In this document: positions 1 to 64,000 of the stretch, piece by piece
Layout of the letters: every line of letters starts with the position of its first letter
Position numbering within the stretch: position 1 is the first letter of the stretch
Assembly (NCBI RefSeq): GCF_021028975.2
Contig: NC_059427.1
Span: 156,178,001 to 156,242,000 of the forward strand
Source: Sphaerodactylus townsendi
Lineage: Eukaryota
Direction of reading: 5' to 3'
Length of the DNA stretch: 64,000 nucleotides
Notes under the pieces: generated by a model
What the model was told of the DNA's origin: nothing
What the model saw: only the letters and a program-made list of their open reading frames with translations
The model's database searches: none
Translations under genes and position numbers: made by a program

Positions 1-1144
1 TAAATTCTTTCTTTCTGCCTCTTTTTCTTTCCTGTCTCTATGCAACCCTCATCCCCACCTATACAGTCCACCACGATGCTGGTTTTCCTAACTTTGATTC
101 TTCGCCCTGTTTGTAGGGAACCCCCCCCCCCCATTCCCGCAAACCTCATTTTCAAGATGAGTAAAGATCCTATCTCTTTCACCTTCCTCCTCCCCTCCCT
201 CCCCTCCCTCCCCCACACCCTCCCCTCCCGTCTTCACCAGGCCTGATCTCTCATTGGAGCTAATGGGGACGAAAAGAATGTAAGTTATGTTCCCTTTGTC
301 TCCATAAGACTGTTGTTCTCTTTCCCCCCTCCCCTTCTGCCCTTCCCCTCCTCTCTTTCTGACTTGCTTTGTTTTAAACAGGAATACGGTTTCAGTTCAT
401 GTGCAAGGCTTTTCACGTGCATCCAGGCTCTCCAAGGACTACACGTGTAGCCCATCCTTCAGGAATGTCTCCTCGGAAGTAAACCCATTGCAATCTAAAG
501 AGGACTGATTCTCAAGCAAGGGTGCATGAGATTGCCAGCCTTTATTGCCCAGGTTACTCCCACTCGCTCCGATGGGTTTTATTCTGAGGCAAGTATGTAT
601 TGGGATAGTATAGCTTTAAGGCAAGACCCGGATCACTGGATCTCCCGCCCCCGCCCCAGAAAACCATTCCAGCAGGCTTGGCTGGTGTATATTTCTAAAC
701 AAAGACAAAATCCTACTCCTATACCCCACATTCCTTCCCCAAACTGCAAATGCTTTGTGAATGACCAGGCATATCTGTGTGTTCTTGAGCGCCTATACAT
801 TGTGTGCGTCTTACGTGTAAATTTCTGTGCATTNNNNNNNNNNNNNNNNNNNNNNNNNNNNNNNNNNNNNNNNNNNNNNNNNNNNNNNNNNNNNNNNNNN
901 NNNNNNNNNNNNNNNNNNNNNNNNNNNNNNNNNNNNNNNNNNNNNNNNNNNNNNNNNNNNNNNNNNNNNNNNNNNNNNNNNNNNNNNNNNNNNNNNNNNN
1001 NNNNNNNNNNNNNNNNNNNNNNNNNNNNNNNNNNNNNNNNNNNAAAAAGAGCTCTTATTCACAGCTTTAAAAACGACCCTTTTGTAGACGACCCACAACA
1101 AAAAAGGCAGGATACAGCGGCTTTGAAAGCAACCCGTAGGTACA

Positions 1145-16782: not shown

Positions 16783-19700
16783 TATATGTATATATATATA
16801 AATATATATATATAAATATATATAAATATATATAAATATGTGGTTTAAAGACGGNNNNNNNNNNNNNNNNNNNNNNNNNNNNNNNNNNNNNNNNNNNNNN
16901 NNNNNNNNNNNNNNNNNNNNNNNNNNNNNNNNNNNNNNNNNNNNNNNNNNNNNNNNNNNNNNNNNNNNNNNNNNNNNNNNNNNNNNNNNNNNNNNNNNNG
17001 AACCGACTATGAGATGGTTTTGTTTCTGAGGATCGGATTTCTGGGTCGTGACGTATGCCTGGTCGCCTGGCCTCTGCGAGCTACACGTTTACGTGCTAGT
17101 AAATTGTTTGGGGCTGCAGTTCTTGAACATTAAAATGGCTGTGTCTGCTCAGGTCCATGGGCAGGACCTGCTTTCTCTGTTTGGCACCGGGTGACGGGTA
17201 AAGTCTTGGGGTGCCAAATCAGGGCGCCTCTAGATATGTGCGGTGCTGATGGTCTGATGAGGGTCGCGGGGAAGAATTTTTTACGAGTCGACAGTGATGC
17301 TGTGAACCACAGAGTTGCCGAAAGGGTCTTTTTCCTGGTCACCTCTCGGTTGTTTCCCTCGCTGGTATGTCGAGCTAGCTTTGCTCTGGTGAATGACTCT
17401 CAGTCACTCGCGTTTCTCACTTACAAAAAACCCCCCCTGATTTGGCGTGTCTGTTTCCTCTGCCCTGCCCCAACAATCGCCTCTCTCTTCAGGGCTGAGG
17501 ATCGCCCATACAAAACGCATTTTAACCTATTGATTTTCTCCTTAAACTGACATATTGCCGTCGTTCGTACAGTCAAAGCATTTGGGTGGGTAGAGGAAAA
17601 ACAGGCAGCCACGTCCTGATTTGTATGCCAGCCGTGCCCGAAGTAAATAGGTAGGCTTCCTTTATTCACATCGTCGCTATAAGACCAGGGGGTCGTAGCG
17701 AAAAGGCCCAAGTATTATTGACAGACACGCTGGGCGAAGAGGAGAATCCATGGTTTGCGACCCAGATTCGCCCCTGTCGCTGCCGCTGAAGTTTTGGCCT
17801 CAAAACCAGCGTTTGATCCCCAAGTAGCGCCACAAACCCTGCAGTAAAGGCGGACACTGAAAAAAACCCACACATTTGACTTGGCAGCGAGCAATCATAT
17901 CCGTTTATTAAGATGAGTGCCATTAAATTGAAGGCAGCAAAACCATTCGTGCAGAAGGGTCGTTAGAATGATCGCAATACCCACAATACTCCTAGCAATA
18001 CACCGATTTTTCATTTCACCGAGGGTATCCGAGGCTTGGAGGGAATAGGGTATAATTAACCAAAGTTTTTAAAAGCGTGGTAATGGATGCACTCCTTGAA
18101 ATCATGTGATATCCCTGTTTCATTCCCCGGTGTGGAGAAAAGGGGGGGGGGAGAGCGATGGGAAACATGTGCATGGAAGAAGGGGGGAAATAATTACAGT
18201 TTCCTGCATCGGTGGTCGAACCTGGAGCAATTAGAAGAGCAAGTTTGCTGGGGGGGAAAATAGAGTTTGATTGCAAAGCGACAGTAGCAGCCGACATCAA
18301 AAACATGCCTTGAATTATTGCTGGGGTAGGGGCGATATTGACACCAATTTTCAGTGTGGTTTTGGCTCGGATACCTCTTTAGAACTGCTGTTCTGTTTGC
18401 GCAGTGAGGACTTCCGGTTTCTTAACGTGAGTGGTCGGTTTCACCTAGTTATGGGCTGCTTTGAACCCCTGTCTAGAATTTCGGAAATTGGATTGTGTGT
18501 GCGTGTGTGGGGGAATGGTTCCCTCCCAATGTAAAGACATTGGAGGCTGGTGGATTTCAGTGGGAGACGATTGAAGCACGTGCTTAGATCTCCGGTTTAA
18601 ACCAAGGGGTGTCCGGTTGTTGGATCGTGCCCCTAAATATTCTTAATGGGCAGGTTTATTGTTTAAAAAAATACCCAGACAAAACAGAGCTTCGGTGAAC
18701 ATCTGGATTTTAAAAGACTAGTCACTGGGGTGAGTGTATTTTAAAAAGAAATTGAGAAGAGGACCTGCATGATTTAAGGAATTGTGTCTGGGAGGTAATG
18801 AAAAATGTTTGCAAATGTTATCTATCAAACAGAAGTCCAGGGGCACCTTTGATTCCAGCAGGAGCCTTTCTCAGTCAAAGTTCTCCAAATTTCATGGTGG
18901 GAAAGAATAGAAGAAGGCAGAAGGTCCCAAACTGAGGCATGGTGGTGTCCCTGGACTTCTGCTCTATTATGCTGCAATTGGCTAGCACGACTTCCCCTCT
19001 GCAATCTGATTTTTCTGTCCTCAAAAGCGACTGGCTACATTTCCGCCTTCCCCCGTCTTTGCGCCTTTTTTTGGGAGCCGCCTAGGCATGGGAGAGTCCG
19101 CAGAGAAATTGGCTTGAGCTTTGGGGGCCTCTCCGGATTTTGAAACCACCCCTGCATGGCATCCGATGACTTGGCTGGGCGGAAATACGTCGATATGGAA
19201 AGGGCCATCTTGAATTCTTATGGCAGACTGTCTAGAAATGTATCTGCTACTGGGAGCTTCGTGCGCTCCACCCTTTCCCCATGTCTGTATTTATTAATCA
19301 GGGGAGAACGGGGCTGAAATATATGAAGGTGGCTGTTCCGGGTATTGGTGTGGATAGCCAGTTGCAAAATCACGTCTCAGGACCCAATCTTTTTGGGCTC
19401 TTCTAGTTCACCAGTCTGAGGTTCAGGAATTGGGAATGCGTCCCTGCCTAGTGCTGGGTATACAATCTGAAATGGCCCTCTAACAAACCAACGAAACACG
19501 AGCTGTCTACCTCTAGGAACATCCATTGGATTCAAAAGCTATAGGACTAAGGAGCTGATTTGTGACACTTACCTATGATCTTGGCAGGAGCTTTGGGACA
19601 GACCCTAGCTCATTTTCCCAGGCCATTAACCGAATGTAATAAATACGTCGTCTAAGCCTGGGCAGAGTTACTCCAGTCGAAGCCAACTGAAAGCAAAGGC

Positions 19701-22700
19701 TAGAGGAACTCTGTTCGGGACTGCTTGGACAGAGCCGCCAGTTTCTCGGTCTGGAGAGGCTTTTCTATCGTTCCAGCCCTTGCAAAGTTGTCAGCAAAGT
19801 TCGCTGGCATGGAGTCAAAGGTTTTTGGTCTGTGATTCAATTGAAAAAAAGCAATGGAACAGATTCAGGCCGGACTTTGCAAAAGTTGACCTGTTTCACT
19901 CTGTCGCCTTGGACTGACGCGGATTATTAGGCACATCCCCCTTCCCGATTTGTACCATCGTACAGGCTGGCAGGACACACAACTCCCCGACCCACCCCCA
20001 ACCCCCAAACCCTTTAGATTGCATTTTATAGACAGTGGAAATTTGGAGAAAAAAACCCCCCAATCTTTCTGTTTCCCCCTTTAATTTCTCTCTTTTGTTG
20101 TTTACTTGTTTTGTATACTGCCACCAAGTGACTGAAACTTGGCAGGCCAACACTTCCCCAGTTTGGTTGTGTGCCCCCCCCCGCCCCCGCTTTCTGTTGG
20201 AGAATGAGGGTGGGTGGAAGAAAGGGGTGGCGGGGAGAGAAAGAGCAAGTCGAAAATAACGTTGTTTCAGTCGGGGAGAGAAAAGACTGGTCTGCCATAA
20301 AGGCCGGAATCAAGCAGACTTTTACTACTTTTAAAGCTGGGCCCCCTGCCCGCTGTTCCTTTTGCCATCACATATATAGCCCCCTATTAAGGTGCTGGTC
20401 GAAGACTCGAACCTTTACGAAGTTTGGTCTCCCAAAGCTATTTGGCAGTCTGAGATGGGAACTATTCAGTGGCACTCTCTTTTTCTGGCTTCCCTTCCCC
20501 ACTTCACACACCTTGTTGTTGTTTGAGAAATTCCTCCCCCCCCCCCCCCACCACGAGGCAATGTCTTTCATAGTTTCCAGCGTGGATGCATTCATAAAAA
20601 CAGAAAAAGACACCTGGGCTCAAAATCGCCACTCCTGTCCCACTCCTGGATGGGGAAGATGAGTAAGTTGAAGCAGAGCCCCAAATATTAAATCCTGGCT
20701 CAGTTAAAGGCGTTGCAAATTTGTCTGCGTTTTCCAAAGTGGGGAAAAAACGCCTCTCCAAATATATGGCTTAATTCTTTCTAAGCGATCACTTCTTATA
20801 AAAACACACATCATTAAGGCAAATAATATTGCGTCTTCGCTTATTGACTTATTGTTTCTTCTCCTCCTCTCCCTCTCTCTCCTGGCGTCCCAAGATTAAT
20901 TTTTCCCTCTCCCCCACCCCCATGTGCAAACAATAAAATAAAATAAGAACTCATAGATAATGACAACCATTTCTCATTGTTGAATTATTCTTCCTGAACG
21001 TATTAAAATCGTATTCTTCTTTGTTTAATCTGTTCACGGGCATAAGTAGTTCCTTATATCCATATTTTATATTGCTCTATAATATCACGCTTTATAATTT
21101 TTAAGCCGGTAGCTATTCTCCATGACAATTCGGTGTGACGTCATGACCGCAACTCTCTTGAATGTCAAAAGGAAAGAGGGAAATGATTGCAGAGAACATT
21201 TCCGTGCCATAAAACGGAGTAATCCAAGCCAACCATAAAGTTCTCGAAACTGAACATCCTTTGGTGAAGTTTGCTGTGCTATTGGGCTATAATAGACATT
21301 CCACAGGAGCTAGCAAAAAACCCTCTCCCCAAAACACAACTCCCCAGTGGATCAAAGCAACCAATAATATCGTTGGCCCTTGTACTGTCAGACCCTGAAC
21401 ATTCCAAATCGCAAGGAATATTTTTAAAAAGAAAAGAAAATAAGAATAAGCAGAAAACGACTAAATATTTATAGGGAGGCAAATCAGTTTTCACGTTAAC
21501 TAGATATAGACACATTCACAATTCTTTAGGGCGATAAGAAGCTTTAATCTTTTTTTAAAAAAAACAATTAGGACAGATTAAAAGCAGAAGGTATGTTTGT
21601 CAACAATAGTGGCAGTTACTTGTGAAGATCCTCCTGGAAGTCCGGAAGGTTTCGAATCTTGGGGGTGAGGAGGAAGCAAGAGATCTGAAATGAGAAACAA
21701 GAAGGAGAAGAGAGGAGAAATAAATACACAAACCAACAAACGGGAAATGTACAAACGGGGCACGCATGTGCAAGGCACGAATGGTTTAGGCGTCAGCAAG
21801 TTAGGGAATCAGGAAAGCGGGAAGGAGAGATCTACACAAACACTTAGGGACCTTAGGAAAAGAACTTGAATCCTTACTGATCTACCAGCCAGGAGGCAAT
21901 TGATTGGAAAGGGTATTAAACGCCACAATGGTTTTGCCATTCACAGACGTGTGTTTTGACCGTTTCCAGAACCCCCCATCTCCCCTTTCCTTTCCCAAAC
22001 CGTGTCCAATGGTTGGGGCATGGTGTTGTTGCCAAACTAGAAAAAAACAACAACACAGGCTGGTTCTCCCACCCCACTCCTGCACACTCTTTCCTCCACT
22101 CTCGAATTGCCCCACTAGGTACTCCTGGGAGTCCAGCAATGTTCTATGTCAAAACTGGGAACCTTTACTTTTGGAAGGAAACTTAGCATGGCAGGGTAGG
22201 GTTGATGGCAGGGATAGCAAGAAACTACCTGAAAGTTAGAATCTACAGCAGTTTCTCATAAAGCTATAGCAAGGAACCTCAAATCAACCAGGGCTCTACG
22301 TTGCCATAAACACCATCGTACATTTTTTGACTGTTTCTCCGTCCAGCAAAGGCTAGTTAGAAAGTTACAGGCCGAACCTTGGAAACGGAGTTTTTTCGAC
22401 ACAGAAAAATCTTCCTGGATTATTACTAATTCTTAATGTGTGTCTCTTTGTCAACAGAAGTGGTTTGTGGGGCTTCTCAACTTTCCTGCTCTGGAGGTTG
22501 TTGTTTTTTGTCAACACATTGAAATCCATTTGCAGCCAGGTTGAGTTAATAAAGGTGGGGGGGGGGACCCCAAACTCTGCTGGAAACCGGTAATCCGCAT
22601 GATGAAAATAACCGAGATGTAATGACTGTAATAGAAGGGCTGGATCATAACATCGCAAACAGATCCGTCAGGCACCATTGGCTGGTGGCGTTTCTGAGTA

Positions 22701-25700: not shown

Positions 25701-26831
25701 TTAATTACGAACAAAACCCACTGAGAAATACACTTCAGCTTTCCAGATATTCGTCTGATTTCATTTCATGGACTACACCACATAGATTGCTACTTTCAAA
25801 ATAATAAAACAACAAAACCACAAAAAGGTCCTCAAACAAGTACATGGGAAGGTTTCCTAGTCCTACATGATTTTTTAAACAGCAAGCCAGTGGAATGCTG
25901 AAGGAGGCAGGCTTTATTTACAGATCAGCAGGTATATTTTACATTGAAGGAACAATTTATGGCTCTGGATTGAAATTAAAATGAGATTTGCTGTCCATTT
26001 CAATTAGTGCATCGTTGCAAATCCACACAGGAGGAGAATATAATCTCCTCTCTAATCTAACTAAACATTTCCAGGGAAGTTATCTAATCAGCGACAGATA
26101 TCTGGAGCCATAAATAGTGGGTGGGATCATTTTTAGTTTTTTGGGGGGGCAAACGTAAACATGACCTGCTCTTTCCAACACACTCCACTGCAAAGGGACA
26201 AGTCAAGCTTTGAGCACTGTTAACGGTGTATATGTATGTAAACATTCCTCTAGCAGTTTCCAAACTCTCTGAAAAATTACTAAGCGAATATTTTAAAACA
26301 GAACCTTCGGAATGTGCTAAAAAAGAAGGATTAAGGTGAAACCAGAATGTTGTGGTTTGATATGAGAGAGAGAGAAAGGAGTAGAGAGAAAGACAGAGAG
26401 AGGGGCTGCAAAGTTCTTAAAATTGTAAAGTACNNNNNNNNNNNNNNNNNNNNNNNNNNNNNNNNNNNNNNNNNNNNNNNNNNNNNNNNNNNNNNNNNNN
26501 NNNNNNNNNNNNNNNNNNNNNNNNNNNNNNNNNNNNNNNNNNNNNNNNNNNNNNNNNNNNNNNNNNTGTTTCCTTTTCCCTGCTTTCAAGATGGTCATGC
26601 AAGGAACACAAGCACTTGATTCCACATTTATTGACCAATAGTAAATTAGTGGAGGGAAAGAGAATTTATGGTTTAATATTTTATGCACACTTGAGATTTA
26701 TGGCTATAATTTCTGGCCTATTTGGGTAGCTAGGTATTAAGCAAGCACTAGGAGGTGGGGGAAACCAAACATCCAGATCTTCATAATCGTTTAATTAAAA
26801 AAAAAAGTCTAATTGGACTGTGATTTTTTAG

Positions 26832-40205: not shown

Positions 40206-40425
40206 TGGGGTGTTGTGGGGTTTCTGGGCTGTGTGGCTGTGTTCCAGTAGCATTTTCTCCTGATGTTTCTCCGTCATCTGTGGCTGGCATCTTCAGAGGA
40301 TCTGAAGATGCCAGCCGCAGATGCAGGCAAAACGTCAGGAGAAAAATGCTACTAGAACATGGCCCTACAGCCCAGAAACCCTACTCACCCCAGTTATTCC
40401 GGTCCGCAGTGAAAGCCTTCAACAA
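40206..40425 (+). mobile_element. Penelope-like-element-derived fold-back insertion, copy 1
   Basis: Inverted arms of about 92 nt (40206-40297 / 40301-40392) plus a ~33-nt unpaired tail. Direct repeat CACTCTTGAGTTG at 40195-40207 and 40426-40438 (target-site duplication). Degenerate hammerhead cores on both strands. Confidence 0.8.
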
Positions 40426-43322
40426 CACTCTTGAGTTGACCTGAGAGGCTGATGAAGGTTTTGAGTGAGGTTGGAGAATGGAGGGCCACTGAGCAGCCTT
40501 TTGCAAGATTCTCTGTGGATGAAGCTGTGGAAAGTGTTTGAAGATGTTGCCAGAAATGACAGCCCAGGTAGGCAGGCTCTTTGTCTAGTACTCATAGGAC
40601 CTCAGTCAGGATGCAACGCTGCCTTCTTCTTTGTTCACCTTCAAGAAAATGGAGAAAAGTGTACAAAGCAGGATGATGATCAGGGAAGGAAAACAGATTG
40701 GCTTCAGAATAAATCCTTGAAAGAGCAAGGCTGGGTCTCTAAGTTCCTTCATTGGGGAAACAGCAATTTGGAGATTGCCCCCCCCCCCCTGAATTTCCAG
40801 CCTTCCCAGCTATAGGAAGAAAAAGTGTGATGATCAAATTTCACTCATGAAGGCACCCAATAGGCTGTCCATGAAACTTTTTCCTGTTACATCCCTGCTA
40901 TTGGCCTACAAAGCCCAGGAGAAAGACAGTGGAAATTTGTAGGAGAAAGTTTTGCTGTAGAGAATCAAGACTGAGATTCCCCTTTCTGTTGGTACCTTTT
41001 CTAGCAACTCTTTGTTTCTATGGTTTAATTCCTTGGTGATTCTCACAAGAGAAGTTCACTCCACTGATCCCTTTTGTGTGCAACTACTTTACAGTCTGTG
41101 CTCATAGATTTTTCCTCACATCATATCACCTTTGGTAAACCTCAGAAAGGGAAATGACATAACTGTGTATACCATGCTTACAGAGCCAGCAAAAATAAAT
41201 GTGCACAACAGACAATCTTTAAAGAAAAAAAGACACTTCAGCTTCCAAGGACTCCATGGGTCTGTTGTAGGTCATACATCTTTCCAGAGTTCCCTATAAA
41301 CAGCACTACAATAAGACCCATCAGCATTGAAGAACCCTCCTGCTTTAACTTGGAACGGAAGGACTTCGGTCTCAGAAGTTGTCTGTGTGTGTGTTTGTGT
41401 GTGTGAGAGAGAAAGTGTGTGTGCATATGGAAGGTTGCAAGCTTCACACTTCTTTGAAAGCAAACCCCATTGACAATTAACAAGAGGTACTTCTGAAGAA
41501 ACATCTTTAAGAAAGAAGTCTAATCAGGAGCAAAACCGATCACTTAAATTAGAATGGTTTGTGGGCTGGGCAGTTAGCAGGAAGAGCAGAAAGGAGGAAA
41601 GGTCACCCACATACAAAAGGGAGAGGAAGGGGGGGGGGGGATATGAATTGCACTTTCCATTTTCCTCCCAAGAAAATACCTTCACAGGAACCTAGTTTAT
41701 TCTCCTGTCTACCTAATTTGATTTGCATTGGCAGGGAGATTGGAATGAAAACCACCCCATTCACTTTCAACATGGTAGAGCCCTACTTTCAGAATACTGT
41801 CATTGAGTCTATTTGTGGGTGTACTTTGTGCATGCAGCGTGTGTCCTTTTGTGTAGGCACACATGTATGCTCGGTCACACATGCCTGGTTTCTACTGTAG
41901 GGAGTGCCCATCTTTGTATGTTGATAGGTTTCAGGGAACTTCTGTGAGCCTATGGGAGAAATGGAGAATGTTTACATATTGCCTATATATTGTCCCAGAA
42001 TTTTACCTGGCTAAATACGAGAAATACAGTTTTCCTGGGTTATTTCAGGCTCCCGGGCCTGAACTAAGGTCATTTTCTGCGCCAACACAGTATTTTGCAG
42101 TGGGACACATCAGCAATTCCTACTGCACACAGGACATACATTGCAACTGCCAACTCTGTTTCATTCATCAGGCATGTCCTGTGAAATGAAGCGAAGCAGG
42201 TCCCAACTCCTCAGTGGAGAAGATTTTCATAGATGCCTTTCAGTCATCTAGAGGGGGGCTGGGTGGGATACATGAAAATAAACACAAAAACCTTCTGCGT
42301 TTCTAGGTCTTAGTGTTCTGGGCTGCGGTAACCAAACTTATTAGCACTCAGAAGGCCCAATCTGTTCTTCAGAAGCTGAAGTGTGTGTGTGTTGAAGTGC
42401 TGATTGGCAAGCAACCTTTTGCTTTTCCTGCACCTCTGCTAGTCTTTGCAGGGGTGTAGTCTGAAGTTGGAATCCTCTTGGGGAAAAGGCCTCTCCAGGG
42501 CTGAGTCCACTTCTAGGTTGGGGAGGGGACAGCTGGATACACAATTTTTTCTCAAGCTAATCCAGAGATGCAACCACAGATACAGAGAAGGGAGGGGAGA
42601 GAGGGGGAAATGGGACCTGGATTTGTACCATGCTGTATCTGCAGTGTTGTCTCTTTGGAAGGAGCTGGTTGTGAGATGTGCGGCGAAAAGGGGCTCCTCC
42701 CAATGTGTACACCTGTGACTCTTTTGACTCCTGGGCCAAGCAAACATTGTAGTGGAAGATGGCTGTGGCAAATGCCCCTGGGGATGGAAAGCAGGAGAGA
42801 TAAGAGGAAGCTTCAAAACCTGAAGCATTAGCATAGCTTGCTTGTGATGACTAGTTCAACTGGACTGCGTGGTATTTGTTGGAACGCCAGAGGGGCATTT
42901 CACCCTTTCTGAACGTGTGACAGCTGATCCTATGCGCAGCCATTGTGTTGGGGCAGGAAAAAAATCCAGCAAGGCCCCAGGGCGCTTTAATTAGGCAGCA
43001 GCTGAGCTCTTTCAATGTCAGTGGAACTGGGTGTTCCTCCCAATGGTGAGAGTGCTCTGACCCTGATGAAGCCAGGTTACATTGGGTGCCCTGCTGACAC
43101 GTCACCTTGGACGCCACTGGGAATTCAAAATGCTCCTTCCCAGATCCTAACTTGGTGTTTCCCTCAAGTAGAATGTTCAGTCATTCCACGTGATGTGCAC
43201 TTGCCTGCTCAAAGAGTTGTACGTTGTCCAGCTTTTCGGACAAGAAAGTCCACAGTGAGATGAAGAAATCAGAGCTACAAGAGGTCAGCTCAAGGTTTAG
43301 GATAGAGTCAGTGTCTTATTGT

Positions 43323-43445
43323 ATTGTCAAAGGCGTTCAAGGCCGGAATCACTAGGTTGTTGCGAGTTTTCCTGGTTGTTTGGCCGTGTTCCAGTAGCTA
43401 CTGGAACATGGCCACACAACCCGGAAAACCCACAACAACCTAGTG
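43323..43445 (-). mobile_element. Penelope-like-element-derived fold-back insertion, copy 2
   Basis: 48-nt arms (43350-43397 / 43398-43445) meet at CCAGTAG|CTACTGG. The tail is on the left. Flanked by AGTGTCTTATTGT / AGTGTCTTTATTGT. Confidence 0.75.
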
Positions 43446-44756: not shown

Positions 44757-44840
44757 TGCTGAAGATTCCAGCCACAGATGCACTGAAACGTCAGGAGAAA
44801 ATGCTACTGGGACATGGCCATACAGCCCAGAACCCCCCAA
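44757..44840 (+). mobile_element. Penelope-like-element-derived fragment, copy 3 (single arm)
   Basis: ctgaagattccagccacagatgcactgaaacgtcaggagaaaatgctactgg..catggccatacagcccagaac, flanked by AAACAATAGCA (44741-44751) / AAATAATAGCA (44839-44849). Confidence 0.7.
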
Positions 44841-46744: not shown

Positions 46745-47075
46745 ATACTTTACTGTACTACCGGTATACTGTACTATATTATACTATGTTATGATATGCT
46801 ACACTATGCTATGCTATACTTTACTGTGCTATACTATACTATGATATACTATACTTTATTATTCTTTTTTATTATTTGTTAAATTTGGTATACCACACAC
46901 CTCCAAAGGGTTCTGGGCGGTGTACTAGTACTTTACTGTACATAGTAAGAAGCACATAGTACTTTACTGTACTATGCTATGCTATACTATATTGTACTAT
47001 GTTATGCTATACTGTACCATACCATACTATGCAATACTATACCATGCTAGGCTATGCTATACTATGCTATACTGT
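46745..47075. repeat. Degenerate pentamer repeat (ACTAT/GCTAT)n interrupted by an L2-type tail fragment (~46855-46925, minus strand)
   Basis: Visible pentamer periodicity. The central tttattatttgttaaatttggtataccac...ggttctgggcggtgtac resembles 35287-35360. Confidence 0.7.
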
Positions 47076-47854
47076 TTGTCTATAGGTACATATACTAGGC
47101 CAAAGGCACACACATGTTTGTAGAGGTATATCTGAACTGCTGTTATTATGGCCGTGCCTGGAATTTCCTGACAAGTACAGATTTCTCCCCGTTCCTGACC
47201 CAAGGACGGAACAGTCACGTGGGAGGGGAAGCAACTACTATTGTTGGAACGGAGTATTTACTTTCTGTCCAAGGCAGGACCAGCGTTTGCCGGAGTTTTT
47301 AACATAAACAGTAACTGTAACATGAACTGTAGTGTCATCTACAAGCATTTGCAAGAGATTTAAGAAGCCTCTTGAGTATGTCTGTGGCCAAGACGCCTCT
47401 GCTGCAGCCTGCAGCCCTTCCTCAAGGCAGGAAACTTTTTTTTGCTTGCTTGGTGGCAGGAGGGGGGAGGGGCAATGGGGGGAACCTAGTATTACTGGAC
47501 GCCGCCCCCACTTTCAAAAACGACGTCGCACCCCATCCTCTAGCCTCTGCCCCCCCTCCCCAAATCGGGTCCCACCAGGTGGTGTACAATCCTACAGTAC
47601 AATCTCCCCCCCACCCCACCTCTCCAACAAAAGTGATGGGCGGCTAGACTTTTATTACAGGGGCTCTTTCCAGGCAGGAAAGGGAGGGGGCCGTAAACGC
47701 AGGGAGGTGTCCGTTTTGATCGGTCTAATCACAGGAAGTGGGGGCAGGGGAGCTGGCCGGCTCTGGGGCTGTAGATTCCACCGTCTTGCCAGCCCTTTGC
47801 TTGCCTCTCCTTTCTCAAAGGTGCCTGTGAAAAGATGAAACAACAAGAAAAGAA

Positions 47855-47896
47855 GCGGGGCGGGGCGGGGCGGGGCGGGGCGGGCGGGGCGGGGGG
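47855..47896 (+). repeat. (GGGGC)n GC-box / G-quadruplex-prone array
   Basis: Eight G-runs separated by single C residues, in a CpG-rich patch (~47660-48300). Confidence 0.8.
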
Positions 47897-48308
47897 AGAG
47901 AAGAGAAGAGGAAAAGTGGCTGGAAAGGGTGGTTGGGTGCAATAAACTCCCCCGCTGCTCTGGTGTGGAAAGATTGCCGCTCATCCAAGCGGAGCCTTTA
48001 AACAAACACTTGTATCTCCTGCCTGGAACCCCAGACGAGTTTATTTGTAGTTTTCGACTTCTCGGAGGCTACTACGGCTAATAAGCAGAGCCCCCTTAGT
48101 GGCGAAGATGGATGCGCCAGGCGGGCGCGCCAGCCTTCCTCCCCCGGACAGTAACTTTATTTCGCGCTAAACAGCGGGGTTAAAGCACAGACAGGGACCC
48201 TCCGGAGACAGCAGGCCAGGCCCAGCTTCTCTGGAGGAGGCTGGGAAGAGGCCGAGGCAGGCTTCAGACCAGAGAGAATGTCTCCTCCTCGACTGAGATC
48301 TAGGAGAT

Positions 48309-48513
48309 CTGGGGTGTTGTGGGGTTTCCGGGCTGTATGGCCGTGTTCCAGCAGCATTTTCTCCTGACGTTTCGCCTGCATCTGATATCCTCTGAAGATG
48401 TCAGCCGCAGATGCAGGCGAAACGTCAGGAAAAAATGCTGCTGGAACACGGCCATACAGCCTAGAAACCCCACAACACCCCAGTGATTCCGGCCGTGAAA
48501 GCCTTCTACGTTG
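48309..48513 (+). mobile_element. Penelope-like-element-derived fold-back insertion, copy 4 (youngest)
   Basis: 76-nt arms (48309-48384 / 48408-48483) differ at 3 positions. Tail tgattccggccgtgaaagccttc. Target-site duplication AGGAGATC at 48302-48309 and 48514-48521. Confidence 0.85.
48388..48430 (+). ncRNA. Minimal type I hammerhead ribozyme motif (Penelope type)
   Basis: Stem I UCCU/AGGA, core CUGAAGA (48392-48398), stem II GUC...GGC, GAAA (48419-48422), palindromic ACGU stem III. Predicted cleavage after GUC at 48426. Confidence 0.7.
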
Positions 48514-48865
48514 AGGAGATCGTTTGTCGTCGTCGACCAGTCAAAAGGGAATTGTCCCCTCTTCTCCGGCCGTTGCTTTAGGGCTACAGCGGAACAGCGA
48601 GAGGCAGAACCCCACTTTGCCAAACCCTTGGACCTGGCATCTCAGCAAGTCCGCTGCCAGCGAAACAGACACACAGACAGACACAAACCCAGGCTGCAAA
48701 TCTGCCTCCCTCCTTGAAGCGATGAAGGCAGAGAGAGCCCTGCAAAGAGCGGGGTCTGTTGAAGAGGGGCGATCGGTACACCTGATCGCAACGTATTTTA
48801 CATCAAATAACGAGATGAAAACGGGTTTCTTCTGCGAAGCTGCCTAGGACGGATTCATGGGCCTG

Positions 48866-48970
48866 GGTGGATGGAGTGTATACCCTGCATGTTAGAACGT
48901 CATCTATAAATGTAACTATCATCTAGCTAGCTATCTAGCTAGCAATTTAACTAGCTATCTAGCTAGTAAC

Positions 48971-49014
<44 letters not shown>

Positions 49015-49186
49015 CTCTCTCTATTAATAAATCAATCAAAACAGCAATAGGTGGATGGAGTGTATACCTTGCATGTTAGAACGTCATCTATATATGTATC
49101 TATCATCTAGCTATCTATCTAGATAGTTGTCCAGCGCTCGCTCTCTCTCTCTCTCTCTCTCAATAAATCAATCAAATTAGCAATAG
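48866..49186. repeat. Two-unit tandem duplication (~185 + ~137 bp) containing (CTAG/CTAT)n and (CT)n
   Basis: GGTGGATGGAGTGTATACCYTGCATGTTAGAACGTCATCTATA starts at 48866 and at 49050. Both units end AATAAATCAATCAAA..AGCAATAG. Confidence 0.9.
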
Positions 49187-50168
49187 ACCTGACAGAAGCA
49201 TGCTCCTTCTGTCCTTTTTTCCCCCCCTCCTGGAATATACGCGTTTTCTCATAGGTGCTAAAGAGCTACTAGTGACGGTTCTTGAGGGGACGACAAACAA
49301 GTCCATCTTCCCCCAAACATAATTGCTTCCATAATCATAGGAAACTGACTAACCAACAGGCATTTCCAGCCTGTGGTTTTCGTTAAAAGAAGACCAGCTG
49401 GCTTCTCCATCGTTGATTTCTTTCTCGGACTCTTGCGTTATCTTTCACTCTTCAAAATCTCCTGACTAATAGACAGAAATCCTGTACCTGCCCGGGACAG
49501 TCCAACGCTTTATATCTGGGCTCCTTCTTTTGGGTGCTGAGCTGCCGAAATGAATTATTTTGCCATGCAGAGATAGGCAAGGCCGGACAGATCCTAGGTC
49601 ATTCTCAAAGTGGCCGGTTCGTGTGTAAACCTAGCGAGAGGTTCGGTGTACACGTTTCATGACAGGATCATATCTCTTATCTGGTAGCAGAAGATGGACA
49701 TGCGTGCCGATCGGATTGCTGGAAAGAAGGAGAGAAGATCGACCTTTAAGGAGATTATTCCTTGGAATAACAGCAATCCTTTTCCTCCGCGATCCTTCCG
49801 AGCAACTGGTTTTGTTTTCTGCCGTCATTCTCCCAGCATTATGGTCTTTCCTAATGAGCGTGTTGATATTCTGGGGGCTCACCTTCCTATCCCCATGAGT
49901 TTGGGCTCTAAATTGGCCCAAGGCTTTATGGGAACCCCGAATTGAGGAGGTCTATTCTCTCTTCCAAGACCCCCGCCCCCCAATCCCAAACAAGGACAGG
50001 AGGCCTGCTCGTGTCCTGTGTAGCATTCCTGAGAGTTCTCTTGTTCAGCATTGCAACTTCTTTGGCTTCGGTGGTCTTGACTGAGGACAACTGCAATTGA
50101 CCTGCAGAATTATCCTTGCCAGCCCCAGCAGGGAGAGATTTAAATCCCCTCCACCCCCCTACCCCCAT

Positions 50169-54027: not shown

Positions 54028-56979
54028 CGCCGTCTAAGCAATATTAAAATGCGCCCACTTCTTAAAAAGCCACTTTCAACGAGATTTGAAGAAAATTGAA
54101 TTCCTGGGAGAGGAAGGGAGGGGCGAGTGGGGCCTGGGGGGCCCTTCGGAGAGAAAGAGGAAACTGTTTGCATATATATATATGTTTTCTTCTTTAACAA
54201 ACAGCAAGAATTAGCCTTCAGAGCTTTAAAACGGTGGGATAAATATTTGCAAGATTTTAGCTTCTGGAGAAGCTAAAAAGAAAAATGTGTTCTTCCTATG
54301 TTTGTGTGTGTATGTGTGTGTTACTTCTGGTGACATGCTTTGGTTATTCAAATCGTTTTGCCCCGACTCATTACTTTTCGTGACAACAGATTTAAGGAAA
54401 AATCAATTAAACATTTGCATATTTCTTTGCATAAATTAGACCTGTCTCTTTGCGTGGTGGTGGGGAACCAGGAAAGGGAGAAAGGAGGAAAACGGTTTGG
54501 TTGGCCNNNNNNNNNNNNNNNNNNNNNNNNNNNNNNNNNNNNNNNNNNNNNNNNNNNNNNNNNNNNNNNNNNNNNNNNNNNNNNNNNNNNNNNNNNNNNN
54601 NNNNNNNNNNNNNNNNNNNNNNNNNNNNNNNNNNNNNNNNNNNNNNNTAATGATATTAGCATTGCTATTTGCAGGAAAAATAAACAGCGTTTACTCTCTC
54701 CCTGCCAAAAAAAATAAATCTCTAGTCATCTTACGGTCATCTTGACAGAGAAAGCATACACGTCAACCAATGAAGCCAATGACATTTTAAGCAGGAGTTG
54801 GGGGGAAAGCAGAATTCACAGGGTTTAGGATTCACTGCAAAGTTCCAAGACCTCATCTTCGGACACATTCAAGCTGCACTCTCCTTCCCCACCCTAGTAT
54901 ATTGTATAATTAGTTAACTTGAATGGATTTTTAAAAACGAAATTAATATTCAAAGATACCAGTACTTATAAGGCATAATCACGTGTGGTCTGAAATACTG
55001 GAGGGGCTGCCCGCCCTGTGTGGCGCCCCCGTATTACAGCCATCAACACGGATTGTTTTGTGCGTCCTTGTTGGATGGTTGTGTGTAACCTTAACTGGGA
55101 AACCGTTCACATGGGGGGGGGGGGGGGTTGTATAATCATTATTATTAGTATTATAACTATTATGATTCCTAAAACCTGAAACAGCAAAGCCTCGGTGAAT
55201 ACGTACTTCATTTTTTTTCCCCCTCAAACCAAGATGCACAGATTGCAAATGGCTAGAGGTGTAGGTTACCAAGCGGTCAGTATGGTAATAGCTTTCACAA
55301 TGAATCCGCAGGGACAATGAGCGCTTATTTTTCTTCAGTACTGTCAAGGAGGCGCTTTGTGCTCTGAAATGGTCCTGGAAATGGTAGCCAGATAGATACA
55401 CGTTTGCAACCCGATTCCTGGCTCGGGTAGGAAATAAAGGCCAGAAATATATTTGATGGAAGTGTTATATTTCTCTTTGCTGTTGTCGCTTTGGACGGGG
55501 GGGGGGGGACACTCCCCCCCACATTGTTCTGCTGGTTGGGCTGAGGCCAGTGTGAAAGGGGGGGGAGGGACGCTTTAGAGACAAAAGAGGTCCCCCACCC
55601 ACGATTTTTTTTCACACGTCCTTGGAGTCTTCTTTGATAGAGACAATAAAAGGAAACTTAGGGAAGCAAGTGTTGTTGTTTTTACAAATAAATATTTTGA
55701 TGAAAATAAAACTTTAGAAAAGAGAACATGCGTACATGTGTGTGTGTGCACGCACGCATATATAAATAAACAGCAAAGGAGTAAATTTTAAAAGTTGCTT
55801 GCCTGCAATGAAATTAACAAGGAAGTAGTTAATTTCAGTCCCCTTTGGGGTTGTGTGTGCACATACACAATGAGAGAGAGGAAACTATGATTCAAGATTC
55901 AAAGCCCACTTGATTTCAGAAGTGCTTACTTTCAAGCAAATATGTAGAAGTTCGGTCTCTGAAATCAAGTGAGCATTCCACAGTCTGATCCTAACACATT
56001 TACTCACAAATTGATTCCACTTTCATTCTGAAGTTAGTATGTGTTCCTGAAACTTCATCTGGAGATTGATTGTCAGTGGAGCAACTTCCAAGGAATTAGG
56101 TTCCAAGATGACAAAGCTGTATTCCCTTCCATTCGACGTGTAAAAAAAAATAATAATTCAAGGAGTACTCATCAGCTTGTAGATTAATGGTTGCTAAATA
56201 TTTATCAGGATTGCCCTCATAAGCCAGGAGTTGTTATGCAATAGCAAGCACATCTTTTTCGGAGTAGTTCTGTTTGGATTCAGATGGGACTCCCTGGGAA
56301 ANNNNNNNNNNNNNNNNNNNNNNNNNNNNNNNNNNNNNNNNNNNNNNNNNNNNNNNNNNNNNNNNNNNNNNNNNNNNNNNNNNNNNNNNNNNNNNNNNNN
56401 NNNNNNNNNNNNNNNNNNNNNNNNNNNNNNNNNNNNNNNNNNNNNNNNNNNNNNNNNNNNNNNNNNNNNNNNNNNNNNNNNNNNNNNNNNNNNNNNNNNN
56501 NNNNNNNNNNNNNNNNNNNNNNNNNNNNNNNNNNNNNNNNNNNNNNNNNNNNNNNNNNNNNNNNNNNNNNNNNNNNNNNNNNNNNNNNNNNTTGGAAACT
56601 GGTACTGGGAAATCCTATGAGAAAGGCTGGGGCGAGTTGGGGGAAGGCGGTTAAGGAGGGCCCAGCTGGGACAACTGAACTGCTGAACTCTTTAAGCTGG
56701 TGCAAAAAGCACTATACAAGTAGGAAGCAGTTATAGCGTCAGATAAGGTGCTGGAGATCATAACACTATTATTCTTTCTCTCCCTAGAGAAAGATAGAGT
56801 TCAATGAGAGTGGGGGAGGGAGAAGAAGACCTAGCCTTTCCGCCTGATGACAGATCCATAGCAGCAGTAAGGGTAATCTCAGCCCAGGCAGTTACCGTCG
56901 TGGCCCTTGCAAACTCCCCCTCCCATGAGAACCAGTGAGACATGTGCTTCCCTCAACATCACAAAGGCCAAATTCTCCG

Positions 56980-57062
56980 GTCCTCTATATGTCCCCTGCA
57001 GAATCGAATTCGTGTGCTGTGCCTCAAGCACAGATTCGTCTCTAGGGGAGTATATGGAGGAT
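56980..57062 (+). ncRNA. mir-10c: miR-10 family precursor (HoxC paralogue, miR-10c) with divergent 5p arm
   Basis: Hairpin GTCCTCTATATG-TCCCCTGCAGAATCGAATTCGTG-loop-ACAGATTCGTCTCTAGGGGAGTATATGGAGGAT aligns end to end with miR-10 precursors. It sits at the canonical position, about 2 kb upstream of Hox4. Confidence 0.9.
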
Positions 57063-61328: not shown

Positions 61329-64000
61329 ACCAGTGAGTGTGACACAGATTGACTTTGGAAATGCCTGGTGAGTTATTTTGCCTTTTTTTTGTGTGTGGGG
61401 GGGTGGCTTCTTACTAAGGGAGGGCTGGGAGAGGGGGGTTATTATGGGGCACTGATTTCCTAAGATATGGGGACTGTTGTCAGTTAAATTTAAGAAGCTT
61501 CTTAAAGACATCTTCTATGTCCCTGAATCAGTGGCCAATTTGCCACTGTGTTTGGAGATTGTGCCCTTTGTACCCTGTGACATCACAACATGGGGACAAT
61601 TTGCTCCAACCCTTTGATTCTACTAGGATGCCTTGGGAATATAAAAAGTGTGGGTTTAAAAAGGAAATAACCCTGTCCTTGTATCTCCTACATGTAAATC
61701 AGGGTGTATTGTTAACGGGCTTCTCTTGCATGAGCATCTCTGTAGTTATAAAAAAAATGAAGGTTTCCTTTACTCCCCTTTCTTTCATTCTCTGCAAACT
61801 AAGTGAGCTTTAGCCCCCTCCCATCCTAAGCCCCCTCCCATCCTAAGCATTGAATACATTGTTAACATTGACACTGCTGTAGATATGATGGGAAGAAATT
61901 GTAGTGAATCAGGATTTGTTTGTTTCCCTGGGGGAAGATGAAAGGGAGATTGGGAGGAGTATAGAAATGCTTGCAAAGGGAACCTACAGTGTGTGTGTGT
62001 GTATANNNNNNNNNNNNNNNNNNNNNNNNNNNNNNNNNNNNNNNNNNNNNNNNNNNNNNNNNNNNNNNNNNNNNNNNNNNNNNNNNNNNNNNNNNNNNNN
62101 NNNNNNNNNNNNNNNNNNNNNNNNNNNNNNNNNNNNNNNNNNNNNNNNNNNNNNNNNNNNNNNNNNNNNNNNNNNNNNNNNNNNNNNNNNNNNNNNNNNN
62201 NNNNNNNNNNNNNNNNNNNNNNNNNNNNNNNNNNNNNNNNNNNNNNNNNNNNTATGTTCCCATTGCTAGTGGAAAGGGTTGTGTTTTGAAGTATACCTTT
62301 CTCCAATAAAAGCTTGTTTAAAGAGGCTTGTGGTTGTACTCCATCAAGATTATAACAGCCCAAACAACTGGTAAAGAGATTTGAAGTAAAGGGATTTGAA
62401 GGCCCTATTGCCTTTCATGCCCTTCCATGTGGATCTTTTGGCCTTCGTTCTTAATCATGCTGGTTCTTAATCATGCAGTAGTAATATTAGCATGTGTGTT
62501 TCCTGCTCTTTTCAGTATTAGTATTGTTAAAGAGCCAAGAAACTACCCCTCAGAAGTTCTGGAGGTTGAGTCAAGGAGTGGGGTTTGAAGGGGACCTCTT
62601 TTCCGCCTTTGATTTCTTTCTCTCTCTGTGTGTGCCTCTCTCCACCCAACCCCCAACCTCAATGATCTTGATATCCATTAAGTAAATCGGAGGCAGGCCG
62701 GGAGAAAGTAATTGACAAGAGGATACAGATTATGGGAGTAATCTACATCTCATTCAAGTCAAAGCAGAACTGGTATCGATTTTAAATGGGTCAGAATTAC
62801 ACACTCGGTGGCTGTAATCCAGACCCGCTTGGAAGCCAATGGCCCAGAAACCCTCAAAATCAATGAATCAGATGAGATGTGCCTCTGCCTGTTAGTTGTA
62901 TTGCTTCCTATGCTTTACTTTGCCGATTAAAAGAATCCAGGAAAGCATTCCTGTACTGGTTAATGTAGCCCAGGGCTGTATTTGCACACTTCCGGATTAT
63001 TAAACAACATGGGCTAGGTTGAGAAGCATTGTTGGGTAAGAGTGTTTCCTTCCTATGGTCAGGCCTGCTGTGTGTGTGGTGGCTGGAGGTGGGGGGGAAG
63101 TAAAGTGGCACACTTACTTTGGAGCAAGCGCCCCTGAACTCTGTTAGGTTTACTTCTATGCAAACAGGGAGGGGATTGGGCTTCAAAACTGAATTCGTCA
63201 AGACTAGAAGTGATCTCTCTCCGAGTGCTGTGTCTGTGTGCCTCTGAATAAAAAATCTGCTGCAAAAGAGGTGATGAGGGAGAGAAGAGTCCTGTCCCCC
63301 CACAGGCACAAATGGCACAGTAAACAAAGAATAAACAAAGTCCGGACTTGCCAGTCACGCTGCTGCCTGCCCCACAGGCCACATGTAGCAAAGTGGATCT
63401 TGCGGGATTCCAGAACACCCAACCCAGTCACACTTCGCCGCCTCTCTCCCCTGGAAAGTGTCACTCCCAAGAACTTCTACAGCAAGTGACTCTGGGAAAC
63501 TGGATGAGTGCATATGTAGCTGTGCTTGGGAGTGTGTTGCTTTGTGGTGTTTTGTGTTTTAATTTCACACGCAGCCTTCAGAACGTGATGGATACTTGGC
63601 CAAGTGTCTGCCAGGGAATCAGGCTGAATGTGCTCGGCCCTTTGTGTGTGTGTATGTGTAAGTGTCTCTGTGTGTGTTCTCTGTTGTGTGCCTAGGAGGG
63701 GGGGGGGACATCCATCTCTTTTGCAACTGTATAGTCTGCATATTCAGTTTTTAACAGAAAACCTTTCGGGAACAGCACCTTTAAATAGGACCTGTATACA
63801 CCTACAACCCCACCCCACCCTTTCATCTTGGAGTTGACTTCAGTGTTTATCTCCTGCGATCCTTTGTGACCTTTCTTCCTTTTCTTCCTCTCTTTTAATA
63901 TTTCATATTCTTTGGTCTTTAGACTTGGCCATGACACAATTCTTGCTGGATAGAGAGCTTATGAATGACTTAGAAAGGCAGGCAAGCAGGGGGTAAAGGG

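What the first reader, a model, noticed from the sequence alone, without database searches (positions are those of the whole stretch)
48302..48521. Intact hammerhead ribozyme caged by its own inverted arm, on the Hox-transcribed strand
Seen: 48388-48430 has all hammerhead core nucleotides (CUGAAGA...GAAA, GUC triplet), stem I UCCU/AGGA, a 3-bp stem II and a palindromic ACGU in place of stem III. It sits in a 76-bp near-perfect fold-back with an 8-bp target-site duplication. Established: Penelope-like retroelements carry minimal type I hammerheads of this form, which cleave as dimers through the palindromic stem III. Inference: in a + strand transcript the left arm is made first and pairs with the GAAACGUCAGGA half, so the ribozyme would be switched off unless the hairpin is melted or edited. 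This could explain why the insertion is tolerated in an interval that long HOXC4/miR-10c primary transcripts must cross, or it could act as a conditional cleavage site.
Basis: partly seen in the sequence, partly recalled or inferred. Interest (0 to 1): 0.8.

Follow-up and report, generated by a model that had tools for sequence, protein, structure and literature searches.

The report
Ordinary Penelope retrotransposon stub with hammerhead
The fold-back with a hammerhead ribozyme motif is real, but it is a routine dead, truncated insertion of a very abundant Poseidon-type Penelope-like retrotransposon, and its inverted arm is the normal layout such insertions leave, not a purpose-built switch.

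Summary
There are 76-nt inverted arms (96% complementary), a 23-nt loop, an 8-bp direct repeat, and one motif with every hammerhead core nucleotide at 48388-48430 on the + strand, which is the strand of HOXC8, C6, C5 and C4.

The element is a 204-bp, 5'-truncated stub of a Penelope-like element (PLE). It aligns without gaps at 77% (aligned by eye) to the published Poseidon_Ac (PAc, Anolis carolinensis) template RNA. Three numbers match PAc:
- the ATG sits at the start of stem II;
- the cleavage site lies 26 nt after the ATG;
- the insertion ends at +115/116, inside PAc's mapped reverse-transcription start zone (111-118).

The 30-bp tail on one side only and the adjacent inverted 5'-truncated copy are textbook PLE insertion features. 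Three more stubs lie within 8 kb, with different fold-back points and longer target duplications.

The "cage" is thermodynamically real: the ribozyme fold costs about +45 kcal/mol. The same fold is already disfavoured by 8-10 kcal/mol without the left arm. PAc's hammerhead cleaves only with its own protein.

No RNA read covers the flanks in two related-species runs. No read ends pile up at the cleavage site. No Rfam hammerhead model scores.

The scan has noted many such stubs elsewhere in this genome. There is no evidence for a conditional cleavage site or for selection. Ordinary; low interest.

The parts
48302..48309 (.). Left copy of the target-site duplication AGGAGATC. The last C could equally be the first base of the left arm, so the duplication is 7-8 bp.
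   Evidence: (family D11)
48309..48384 (-). Left arm: an inverted, 5'-truncated copy of the PLE terminus, sense on the - strand. It covers PLE positions about +11 to +86 from the ORF ATG. It holds GAAACGUCAGGAG but no CUGANGA box, so there is no complete hammerhead on the - strand.
48385..48386 (.). Head-to-head junction between the two cDNA-derived arms. Other family copies continue past this point, as the loose ends at 48384 and 48387 show.
   Evidence: table 7
48387..48513 (+). Right arm: the sense, 5'-truncated PLE copy. It starts 5 nt upstream of the hammerhead core. From the ATG it is 77% identical, without gaps, to the published Poseidon_Ac template RNA over 115 nt (aligned by eye).
48388..48430 (+). 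Minimal type I hammerhead motif: stem I 48388-91/48427-30; CUGAAGA 48392-98; bulged U 48399; stem II 48400-05/48413-18 with an A.A mismatch at 48403/48415; GAAA 48419-22; palindromic CG 48423-24; UC 48425-26. The predicted cut is at 48426|48427.
   Evidence: criteria from PMC4209133
48398..48400 (+). ATG homologous to the PLE ORF start codon. [quoted passage not shown] The remnant reading frame is 38 codons long and ends at the TGA at 48512-48514.
48484..48513 (+). [quoted passage not shown] It spans the interval between the two reverse-transcription start sites (+86 and +115/116).
48514..48521 (.). Right copy of the target-site duplication AGGAGATC.
40209..40428 (+). Related stub 2. The fold-back junction lies deeper, so the left arm holds a full but mutated hammerhead on the - strand. 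The right arm has G12 changed to A. The tail is on the right. The target duplication is about 12-13 bp.
43330..43445 (-). Related stub 3. It is a short fold-back that stops before the hammerhead, with the tail on the left. It is flanked by an imperfect duplication of about 12-13 bp.
44759..44837 (+). Related stub 4. It has a single arm, with no inverted copy and no tail. The core boxes are kept, but the 5' strand of stem I is absent and the base of stem II is damaged.

Best explanation
The feature is a fixed, non-autonomous, dead-on-arrival insertion (48310-48513) of a Poseidon-type Penelope-like retrotransposon in the HOXC5-HOXC4 intergenic interval.

Inferred origin. The element's protein nicked both target strands. 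Each nick primed cDNA synthesis inside the element RNA. One started at the proximal start site (+86 from the ORF ATG), the other at the distal site (+115/116), which accounts for the one-sided 30-bp tail. Both cDNAs stopped early and were joined head to head. This left a 76-bp fold-back flanked by a 7-8-bp target duplication.

The hammerhead. It is simply the piece of the element's pseudo-LTR/ORF-start region that the longer arm happened to retain in full. It keeps all core nucleotides.

Why it is expected to be inert here:
- As a monomer with no helix III, its active fold is disfavoured.
- Its best-studied homologue needs the element's own protein to cleave.
- In any + strand transcript the 76-bp hairpin outcompetes the ribozyme fold by about 45 kcal/mol.

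The 'cage' is therefore a mechanical by-product of insertion, not a regulatory device.

What is shown: the anatomy, the homology, the end positions, the sharing across species and the energetics. What is inferred: the two-strand priming origin and the lack of function.
For: - Anatomy.
- Homology: ungapped alignment by eye to the Poseidon_Ac template RNA printed in Frangieh 2024 gives 89/115 identical from the ATG. C17 falls at +29 in both.
- PAc concordances: the ORF starts at stem II; the cut site is 26 nt after the start codon; reverse transcription starts 111-118 nt into the ORF; the tail is the interval between the two start sites; PAc cleaves and extends both DNA strands. Here the arms end at +86 and the tail ends at +115/116.
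- Insertion layout: Craig 2021 lists high 5' truncation, an adjacent inverted 5'-truncated copy and a 30-40-bp tail at one end only as standard PLE features.
- Other copies: three more family stubs within 8 kb have different fold-back points and duplication lengths of 8 versus about 12-13 bp.
- Abundance: 17,000-21,000 contigs of related species lay on the element. Loose ends show A/T-rich flanks and the family continuation.
- Age: the junction with unique flank is present in contigs of two other species labels (table 8).
- Energetics: +45.4 kcal/mol with the cage and +8.0 to +9.7 without it. The full hairpin folds at -162.6 kcal/mol, z = -20.
Against: - No reverse-transcriptase or GIY-YIG coding sequence is linked to this family within the window.
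- The 38-aa peptide read from the ATG found only three short ORFs called over similar repeats, and no RT-bearing protein.
- The alignment to Poseidon_Ac was done by eye, not by a tool.
- Lack of function is inferred, not shown.
- The RNA runs come from a related species and unknown tissues, and only 6-19% of each run was read. Read-through Hox transcription is therefore not excluded.
- The motif is the only fully intact one in the window. Chance retention and selection cannot be told apart from one locus.
Confidence: 0.88

Rival explanations
1. The hammerhead is a conditional cleavage site in long HOXC4/miR-10c primary transcripts. The left arm keeps it off, and hairpin melting or editing releases it. 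Alternatively, the cage is why the insertion was tolerated.
For: - The core is intact and lies on the Hox-sense strand.
- The cage is energetically real.
- The insertion is kept in three species labels.
- A mir-10-like hairpin lies downstream on the + strand.
Against: - The fold-back is generic to PLE insertion and recurs at other stubs whether or not their hammerhead is intact.
- The monomer fold is unfavourable even without the cage.
- Minimal PLE hammerheads show very low activity even as dimers. PAc's needs PAc protein, and no RNA-seq ends were found at its site.
- No intact partner for dimerisation exists nearby: stub 2 has G12 changed to A and stub 4 has a damaged stem II.
- There were zero RNA reads on 2.8 kb of unique flank in two runs, and no pile of read ends at 48426/27 among the family reads at 500-700x depth.
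- Species that differ by 1-2% share neutral insertions anyway.
Confidence: 0.04
2. The 76-bp near-perfect hairpin acts as a double-stranded RNA source (miRNA, endo-siRNA or an ADAR substrate) when transcribed, independently of the ribozyme.
For: - The hairpin is very stable.
- It comes close to threshold for the Rfam families MIR7504 (72 bits against 83) and mir-2041 (62 bits against 70).
Against: - Both strands score alike and both fall below gathering score, which is what any long perfect hairpin would give.
- No local transcription was detected.
- No small-RNA data are available.
- The many similar fold-back stubs noted elsewhere in the genome make a locus-specific role unlikely.
Confidence: 0.05
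3. It is a DNA-transposon MITE, for example hAT-like with 8-bp target duplications and long terminal inverted repeats, that merely resembles a hammerhead.
For: An 8-bp direct repeat flanks a structure with long inverted arms.
Against: - Duplication length is not fixed in the family: 8 bp here against about 12-13 bp elsewhere.
- The arms are asymmetric, with a 30-bp tail on one side.
- The fold-back junction differs in every copy, and one copy has a single arm.
- There is clear collinear homology to the Poseidon_Ac retroelement, including its ORF start.
Confidence: 0.02

Closest known systems
PAc / Poseidon_Ac, the Penelope-like element of Anolis carolinensis (Frangieh et al. 2024, PMC11167929)
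   Same: - Collinear homology over the hammerhead, the ORF start and the tail: 77% without gaps, aligned by eye.
[quoted passage not shown]
- Insertion ends fall at the two internal reverse-transcription start sites.
- Family flanks are A/T-rich.
   Different: - This copy is a 204-bp stub with no ORF.
- Position 7 is A here and G in PAc. This is a free position.
- The fourth pair of stem II is an A.A mismatch here, shared by stub 2, while PAc pairs all six positions.
- This particular target site is not A/T-rich.
Metazoan PLE minimal hammerheads (Cervera and De la Pena 2014, PMC4209133)
   Same: - No helix III, with a palindromic 15.2-16.2 pair.
[quoted passage not shown]
- A long helix II and a 4-bp helix I.
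- Mostly solitary motifs in truncated PLEs. That paper also reports pairs of motifs on opposite strands 100-700 bp apart.
   Different: Here the opposite-strand arm is truncated before its CUGANGA box, so only one complete motif exists. Activity was not tested.
Complex tandem/inverted PLE insertion structures (Evgen'ev and Arkhipova 2005; Craig et al. 2021, PMC8557442)
   Same: An inverted 5'-truncated copy abuts the sense copy. A 30-40-bp tail is present at one end only. Truncation at the 5' end is strong.
   Different: This is the extreme miniature case: both copies are truncated to about 80-130 bp, so the whole insertion is one hairpin.
Rfam hammerhead families (type I, II, III, HH9, HH10)
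   Same: The same catalytic core boxes.
   Different: No model scores even at E<=10 on a 63-nt query. This fits the absence of any helix III hairpin.

Membership tests
Metazoan PLE minimal hammerhead (min-HHR) | Core boxes CUGANGA and GAAA, plus a U-H cleavage dinucleotide | tested here: met
   CUGAAGA 48392-98, GAAA 48419-22 and UC 48425-26. It is the only descriptor match in the window, with 0 matches in 200 shuffles.
Metazoan PLE minimal hammerhead (min-HHR) | An unpaired nucleotide between A9 and 10.1, and a G10.1-C11.1 pair | tested here: met
   U48399 is unpaired and G48400 pairs with C48418.
Metazoan PLE minimal hammerhead (min-HHR) | No helix III, with palindromic positions 15.2-16.2 that allow dimerisation | tested here: met
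   ACGU at 48422-48425.
Metazoan PLE minimal hammerhead (min-HHR) | A long helix II (6-8 bp) and a short helix I (4-5 bp) | tested here: inconclusive
   Helix I has 4 bp. Helix II has six stacked positions, but the fourth is A.A, so there are 5 pairs. PAc pairs all six.
Metazoan PLE minimal hammerhead (min-HHR) | Self-cleavage at C17 | not testable with these tools
   There is no pile of read ends at 48426/27 among the family RNA reads (table 6). Published homologues are weak or need protein.
Poseidon-type Penelope-like element insertion | Sequence homology to a characterised PLE terminus | tested here: met
   89/115 identical, without gaps, to the Poseidon_Ac template printed in PMC11167929. 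The alignment was made by eye.
Poseidon-type Penelope-like element insertion | A 3' end at the internal reverse-transcription start sites, with an optional 30-40-bp tail at one end only | tested here: met
   The arms end at +86 and the tail (30 bp, 48484-48513) ends at +115/116. PAc starts reverse transcription at 111-118.
Poseidon-type Penelope-like element insertion | 5' truncation with an adjacent inverted 5'-truncated copy, the whole unit flanked by a target duplication | tested here: met
Poseidon-type Penelope-like element insertion | Family members that encode an RT plus GIY-YIG endonuclease ORF | tested here: inconclusive
   No such ORF exists in this stub or anywhere in the window. The 38-aa N-terminal remnant found no RT-bearing protein at E<=0.001. 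The link rests on homology to Poseidon_Ac.
Rfam hammerhead families | A score at or above the gathering threshold of a hammerhead covariance model | tested here: not met
   No hammerhead hit at gathering score or at E<=10.
hAT-like MITE | A fixed 8-bp target duplication and symmetric terminal inverted repeats | tested here: not met
   Duplications are 8 bp here against about 12-13 bp in other copies. The tail is one-sided and the fold-back points vary.
miRNA precursor (MIR7504, mir-2041) | A score at or above the gathering threshold, on one strand | tested here: not met
   72 bits against 83 and 62.4 bits against 70, with near-equal scores on both strands.

The most novel reading that the evidence does not exclude
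In Hox-expressing embryonic tissue a + strand read-through transcript crosses this stub. Its hairpin or hammerhead then affects RNA processing upstream of the mir-10-like hairpin and HOXC4, either through double-stranded-RNA editing or dicing, or through protein-assisted cleavage when PLE protein is present. This would couple retrotransposon activity to HoxC transcript integrity.
Probability: 0.03. Interest if true: 0.6.

Novelty: already known. Interest (0 to 1): 0.1.

Why it matters
It matters little in itself. It is one of a very large number of PLE stubs, and each of its structural features has been published.

Its modest value is as a clean natural illustration of the two internal reverse-transcription start sites and the two-strand priming that Frangieh et al. 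2024 saw in vitro. One arm ends at +86 and the other at +115/116, inside a single insertion.

It also warns that any intact hammerhead core in such genomes should be read as a PLE terminus first. Only a genome-wide bias of caged over uncaged intact motifs on gene-sense strands would make the 'cage' idea interesting.

Tried and rejected
- **Rfam scans.** I ran a gathering-score scan of the whole window, then E<=10 scans of 421 nt and 63 nt. No hammerhead family appeared. Sub-threshold miRNA, SRP and isrG hits reflect only the long hairpin and were rejected.
- **Link to an RT protein.** A search of protein-cluster representatives with the 38-aa remnant ORF gave three short ORFs called over similar repeats and no RT. 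It is inconclusive because the query is short.
- **Poseidon_Ac supplement.** The supplement text of PMC11167929 holds no sequence. The template sequence turned up in the Methods instead.
- **Dimer energy.** The intermolecular helix III crosses stem I in dot-bracket notation, so I made only a rough sum: about -14.5 kcal/mol for the hammerhead dimer against -34.8 for the best non-hammerhead dimer. I do not rely on it.
- **RNA evidence.** Two RNA runs of a related species gave no reads on the unique flanks. This is absence of support, not proof of silence.
- **2026 retrozyme preprint.** It has nothing on reptiles or inverted stubs.
- **MITE reading.** Rejected on the variable duplication length, the one-sided tail and the homology to Poseidon_Ac.

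Full report

Yes. The repeat finder gives inverted arms at 48309-48384 and 48408-48483: 76 nt, 96% complementary, 23 nt apart. It also gives an exact 8-bp direct repeat, AGGAGATC, at 48302-48309 and 48514-48521. The three arm mismatches are 48329/48463 and 48330/48462, which form one CpG site (CCCGG against CCTAG), and 48361/48431. As RNA the 220-nt stretch folds into one hairpin of -162.6 kcal/mol, with z = -20 against shuffles.

The hammerhead anatomy, read:
- stem I: UCCU (48388-91) with AGGA (48427-30);
- core box CUGAAGA: 48392-98;
- a single unpaired U: 48399;
- stem II: 48400-05 with 48413-18 (G-C, U-G, C-G, A.A, G-C, C-G) and a 7-nt loop;
- GAAA: 48419-22;
- palindromic CG: 48423-24;
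- UC: 48425-26, with the predicted cut at 48426|48427.

The real arrangement is the "bulged nucleotide plus long helix II" typical of these motifs.

I wrote a relaxed minimal-hammerhead descriptor and ran it on both strands. This is the only match in 64 kb, and there were none in 200 shuffles. No Rfam hammerhead model sees it, at gathering score or at E<=10 on 421-nt and 63-nt queries. That is expected for a motif with no helix III hairpin.

**2. Strand and setting.**

Homeobox and hexapeptide exons place four genes on the + strand: HOXC8 (5.4/7.1 kb), HOXC6 (27.6/28.7 kb), HOXC5 (33.0/33.8 kb) and HOXC4 (59.5/60.2 kb). A mir-10-like hairpin sits at 56985-57058 on the + strand. It scores 35.8 bits, below the 47.5-bit gathering score.

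**3. What it is.**

BLAST of the element against the window finds three more family members:
- 40206-40428, + strand;
- 43330-43445, - strand;
- 44759-44837, + strand (aligned).

Stubs 2 and 3 are also fold-backs, but their junctions fall at different points of the family sequence. Stub 4 is a single arm. Target duplications are 8 bp here and about 12-13 bp at stubs 2 and 3. In each fold-back only one arm carries an extra tail of about 30 bp. The tail-less arm always ends at the same family position.

Variable duplication length, variable junction and a one-sided tail rule out a cut-and-paste MITE. They match what Craig et al. [quoted passage not shown]

The link to a specific PLE is direct. 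Frangieh et al. [quoted passage not shown] I aligned it by eye, without gaps, from the ATG. The window copy is identical at 89 of 115 positions (77%), and the hammerhead boxes are in register.

Three published numbers for PAc recur here:
[quoted passage not shown]" Here the ATG is at 48398-48400, spanning A9, the bulged U and G10.1.
[quoted passage not shown]" Here 48400 + 26 = 48426, which is C17.
[quoted passage not shown] Here the tail-bearing arm ends at +115/116 (48512/13) and both arms' common end is +86 (48483 and 48309).

The motif also shows every non-descriptor trait that Cervera and De la Pena 2014 list for PLE minimal hammerheads. [quoted passage not shown] That paper also reports solitary motifs in truncated PLEs, pairs on opposite strands, and presence in reptiles.

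**4. Population and expression data.**

I laid contigs of two other species labels and raw RNA reads of one of them on 47000-50000.

*DNA.*
- Contigs run from unique left flank 27 nt into the left arm in both species (47918-48336 and 47918-48335).
- In one species a contig also runs from the tail into the right flank (48481-48964).
- The insertion is therefore shared by taxa whose flanks differ by about 1-2%.
- Between 17,000 and 21,000 contigs lay on the element itself. Their loose ends show the family continuing beyond this copy's junction, and mostly A/T-rich flanking DNA. This fits PAc's preference for A/T-rich targets.

*RNA.*
- Neither RNA run had a single read on the 2.8 kb of unique flank.
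- The element itself is covered 500-700x, equally in both mate directions. Of those reads, 85-92% run on into unlike sequence, so they come from other copies.
- No position qualifies as a place where many molecules begin or end, including 48426/27. Frangieh et al. likewise found no RNA-seq ends at the PAc hammerhead site.
- Caveats: the runs are from a related species and unknown tissues, and only 6-19% of each run was read.

**5. How it most likely arose and works.**

*Shown in vitro for PAc:* the protein cleaves and extends both DNA strands, and it starts reverse transcription at two adjacent internal sites.

*Inferred here:* two cDNAs were primed from the two nicked strands, one from the +86 site and one from the +115/116 site. 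Both terminated early and were joined head to head. The result is the fold-back with a one-sided tail and a 7-8-bp duplication. The longer arm happened to stop 5 nt upstream of the hammerhead core, so one complete motif survives. The shorter arm stops inside stem II.

*Energetics.* The table gives the ensemble cost of forcing stems I and II to form with the core left unpaired.

| Transcript context | Cost of the ribozyme-competent fold (kcal/mol) |
|---|---|
| Full fold-back | +45.4 |
| 56-nt motif alone | +8.0 |
| Right arm without the left arm | +9.7 |

It adds little, though, because the ribozyme is already off by default. [quoted passage not shown] No intact partner for dimerisation is nearby. 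Stub 2's sense copy has G12 changed to A, and stub 4 has lost the G10.1-C11.1 base of stem II and the 5' strand of stem I.

**6. Rivals.**

- *Conditional cleavage site, or tolerance through caging.* Not excluded, but without positive evidence. The cage is generic to these insertions, no local RNA was found, and one locus cannot show selection. I give it about 4%.
- *Double-stranded-RNA or miRNA source.* The near-threshold Rfam hits to MIR7504 and mir-2041 occur equally on both strands and below gathering score. About 5%.
- *MITE.* Rejected, about 2%.

**7. Comparison and novelty.**

The feature works like, and is a member of, the Poseidon-type PLE family. Its hammerhead is a member of the published minimal-hammerhead class. 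It is not a member of any Rfam hammerhead family by score.

Earlier notes of this scan list many similar stubs in this genome. Two follow-ups reached the same "known insertion layout" reading. I treated these as leads only.

**8. Limits.**

- The alignment to Poseidon_Ac is by eye, because the published sequence could not be typed into a tool.
- The peptide search did not recover an RT-bearing relative.
- Transcription in the relevant embryonic tissue is untested.

Verdict: the feature is real, correctly recognised as a PLE hammerhead, and ordinary. Interest is 0.1.

Noticed in passing
window 40209-40428, 43330-43445, 44759-44837, 48310-48513: Four stubs of the same PLE family lie within 8.3 kb of the HOXC5-HOXC4 interval. 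Three are on the + strand and one on the - strand. None was found elsewhere in the 64-kb window by BLAST. Whether this is local clustering or chance is unknown.
   Followed up: partly
window 56985-57058 (+): A mir-10-like hairpin scores 35.8 bits, below Rfam's 47.5-bit gathering score. It was therefore missed by the gathering-score scan. The 5p arm is divergent and the 3p arm is better kept.
   Followed up: partly
Rfam RF03760 (mir-2041) against window 48345-48447: The mir-2041 model consensus is itself a perfect hairpin holding ACGUUUC...GAAACGU. It aligns with the hammerhead half of the PLE fold-back at 62 bits. That miRNA family may itself derive from a PLE fold-back stub.
   Followed up: no
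protein P0001: A 378-aa predicted 'protein' consists of seven tandem 54-aa repeats, each resembling the translated hammerhead/ORF-start region. This implies a tandem array of 162-nt hammerhead-bearing units, satellite-like or retrozyme-like, in some other genome.
   Followed up: no
window 48431 onward, in RNA reads of runs X6 and X7 (table 7): Between 311 and 443 RNA reads per run match up to the hammerhead's 3' end, then continue with a different 30-nt sequence on which they agree closely (0.89-0.92). This points to an expressed subfamily or chimeric transcript that diverges right after the cleavage-site region.
   Followed up: no
window 48295-48312: The target site carries a local 9-bp tandem (GAGATCTAG / GAGATCTGG) that overlaps the left duplication copy and the start of the left arm (D8). 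Part of the apparent duplication boundary is therefore ambiguous by 1-2 nt.
   Followed up: partly
window 48515-48615 and 49020-49120: Contigs of organism C give no depth in the 100 bp just right of the insertion, so its right junction is unconfirmed there. Both species give none at 49020-49120, which the tool flags as a skipped repeat.
   Followed up: no
window 834-1043, 16855-16999, 26434-26566, 54507-54647, 56302-56591, 62006-62252: Six runs of N, 133-290 bases long.
   Followed up: no
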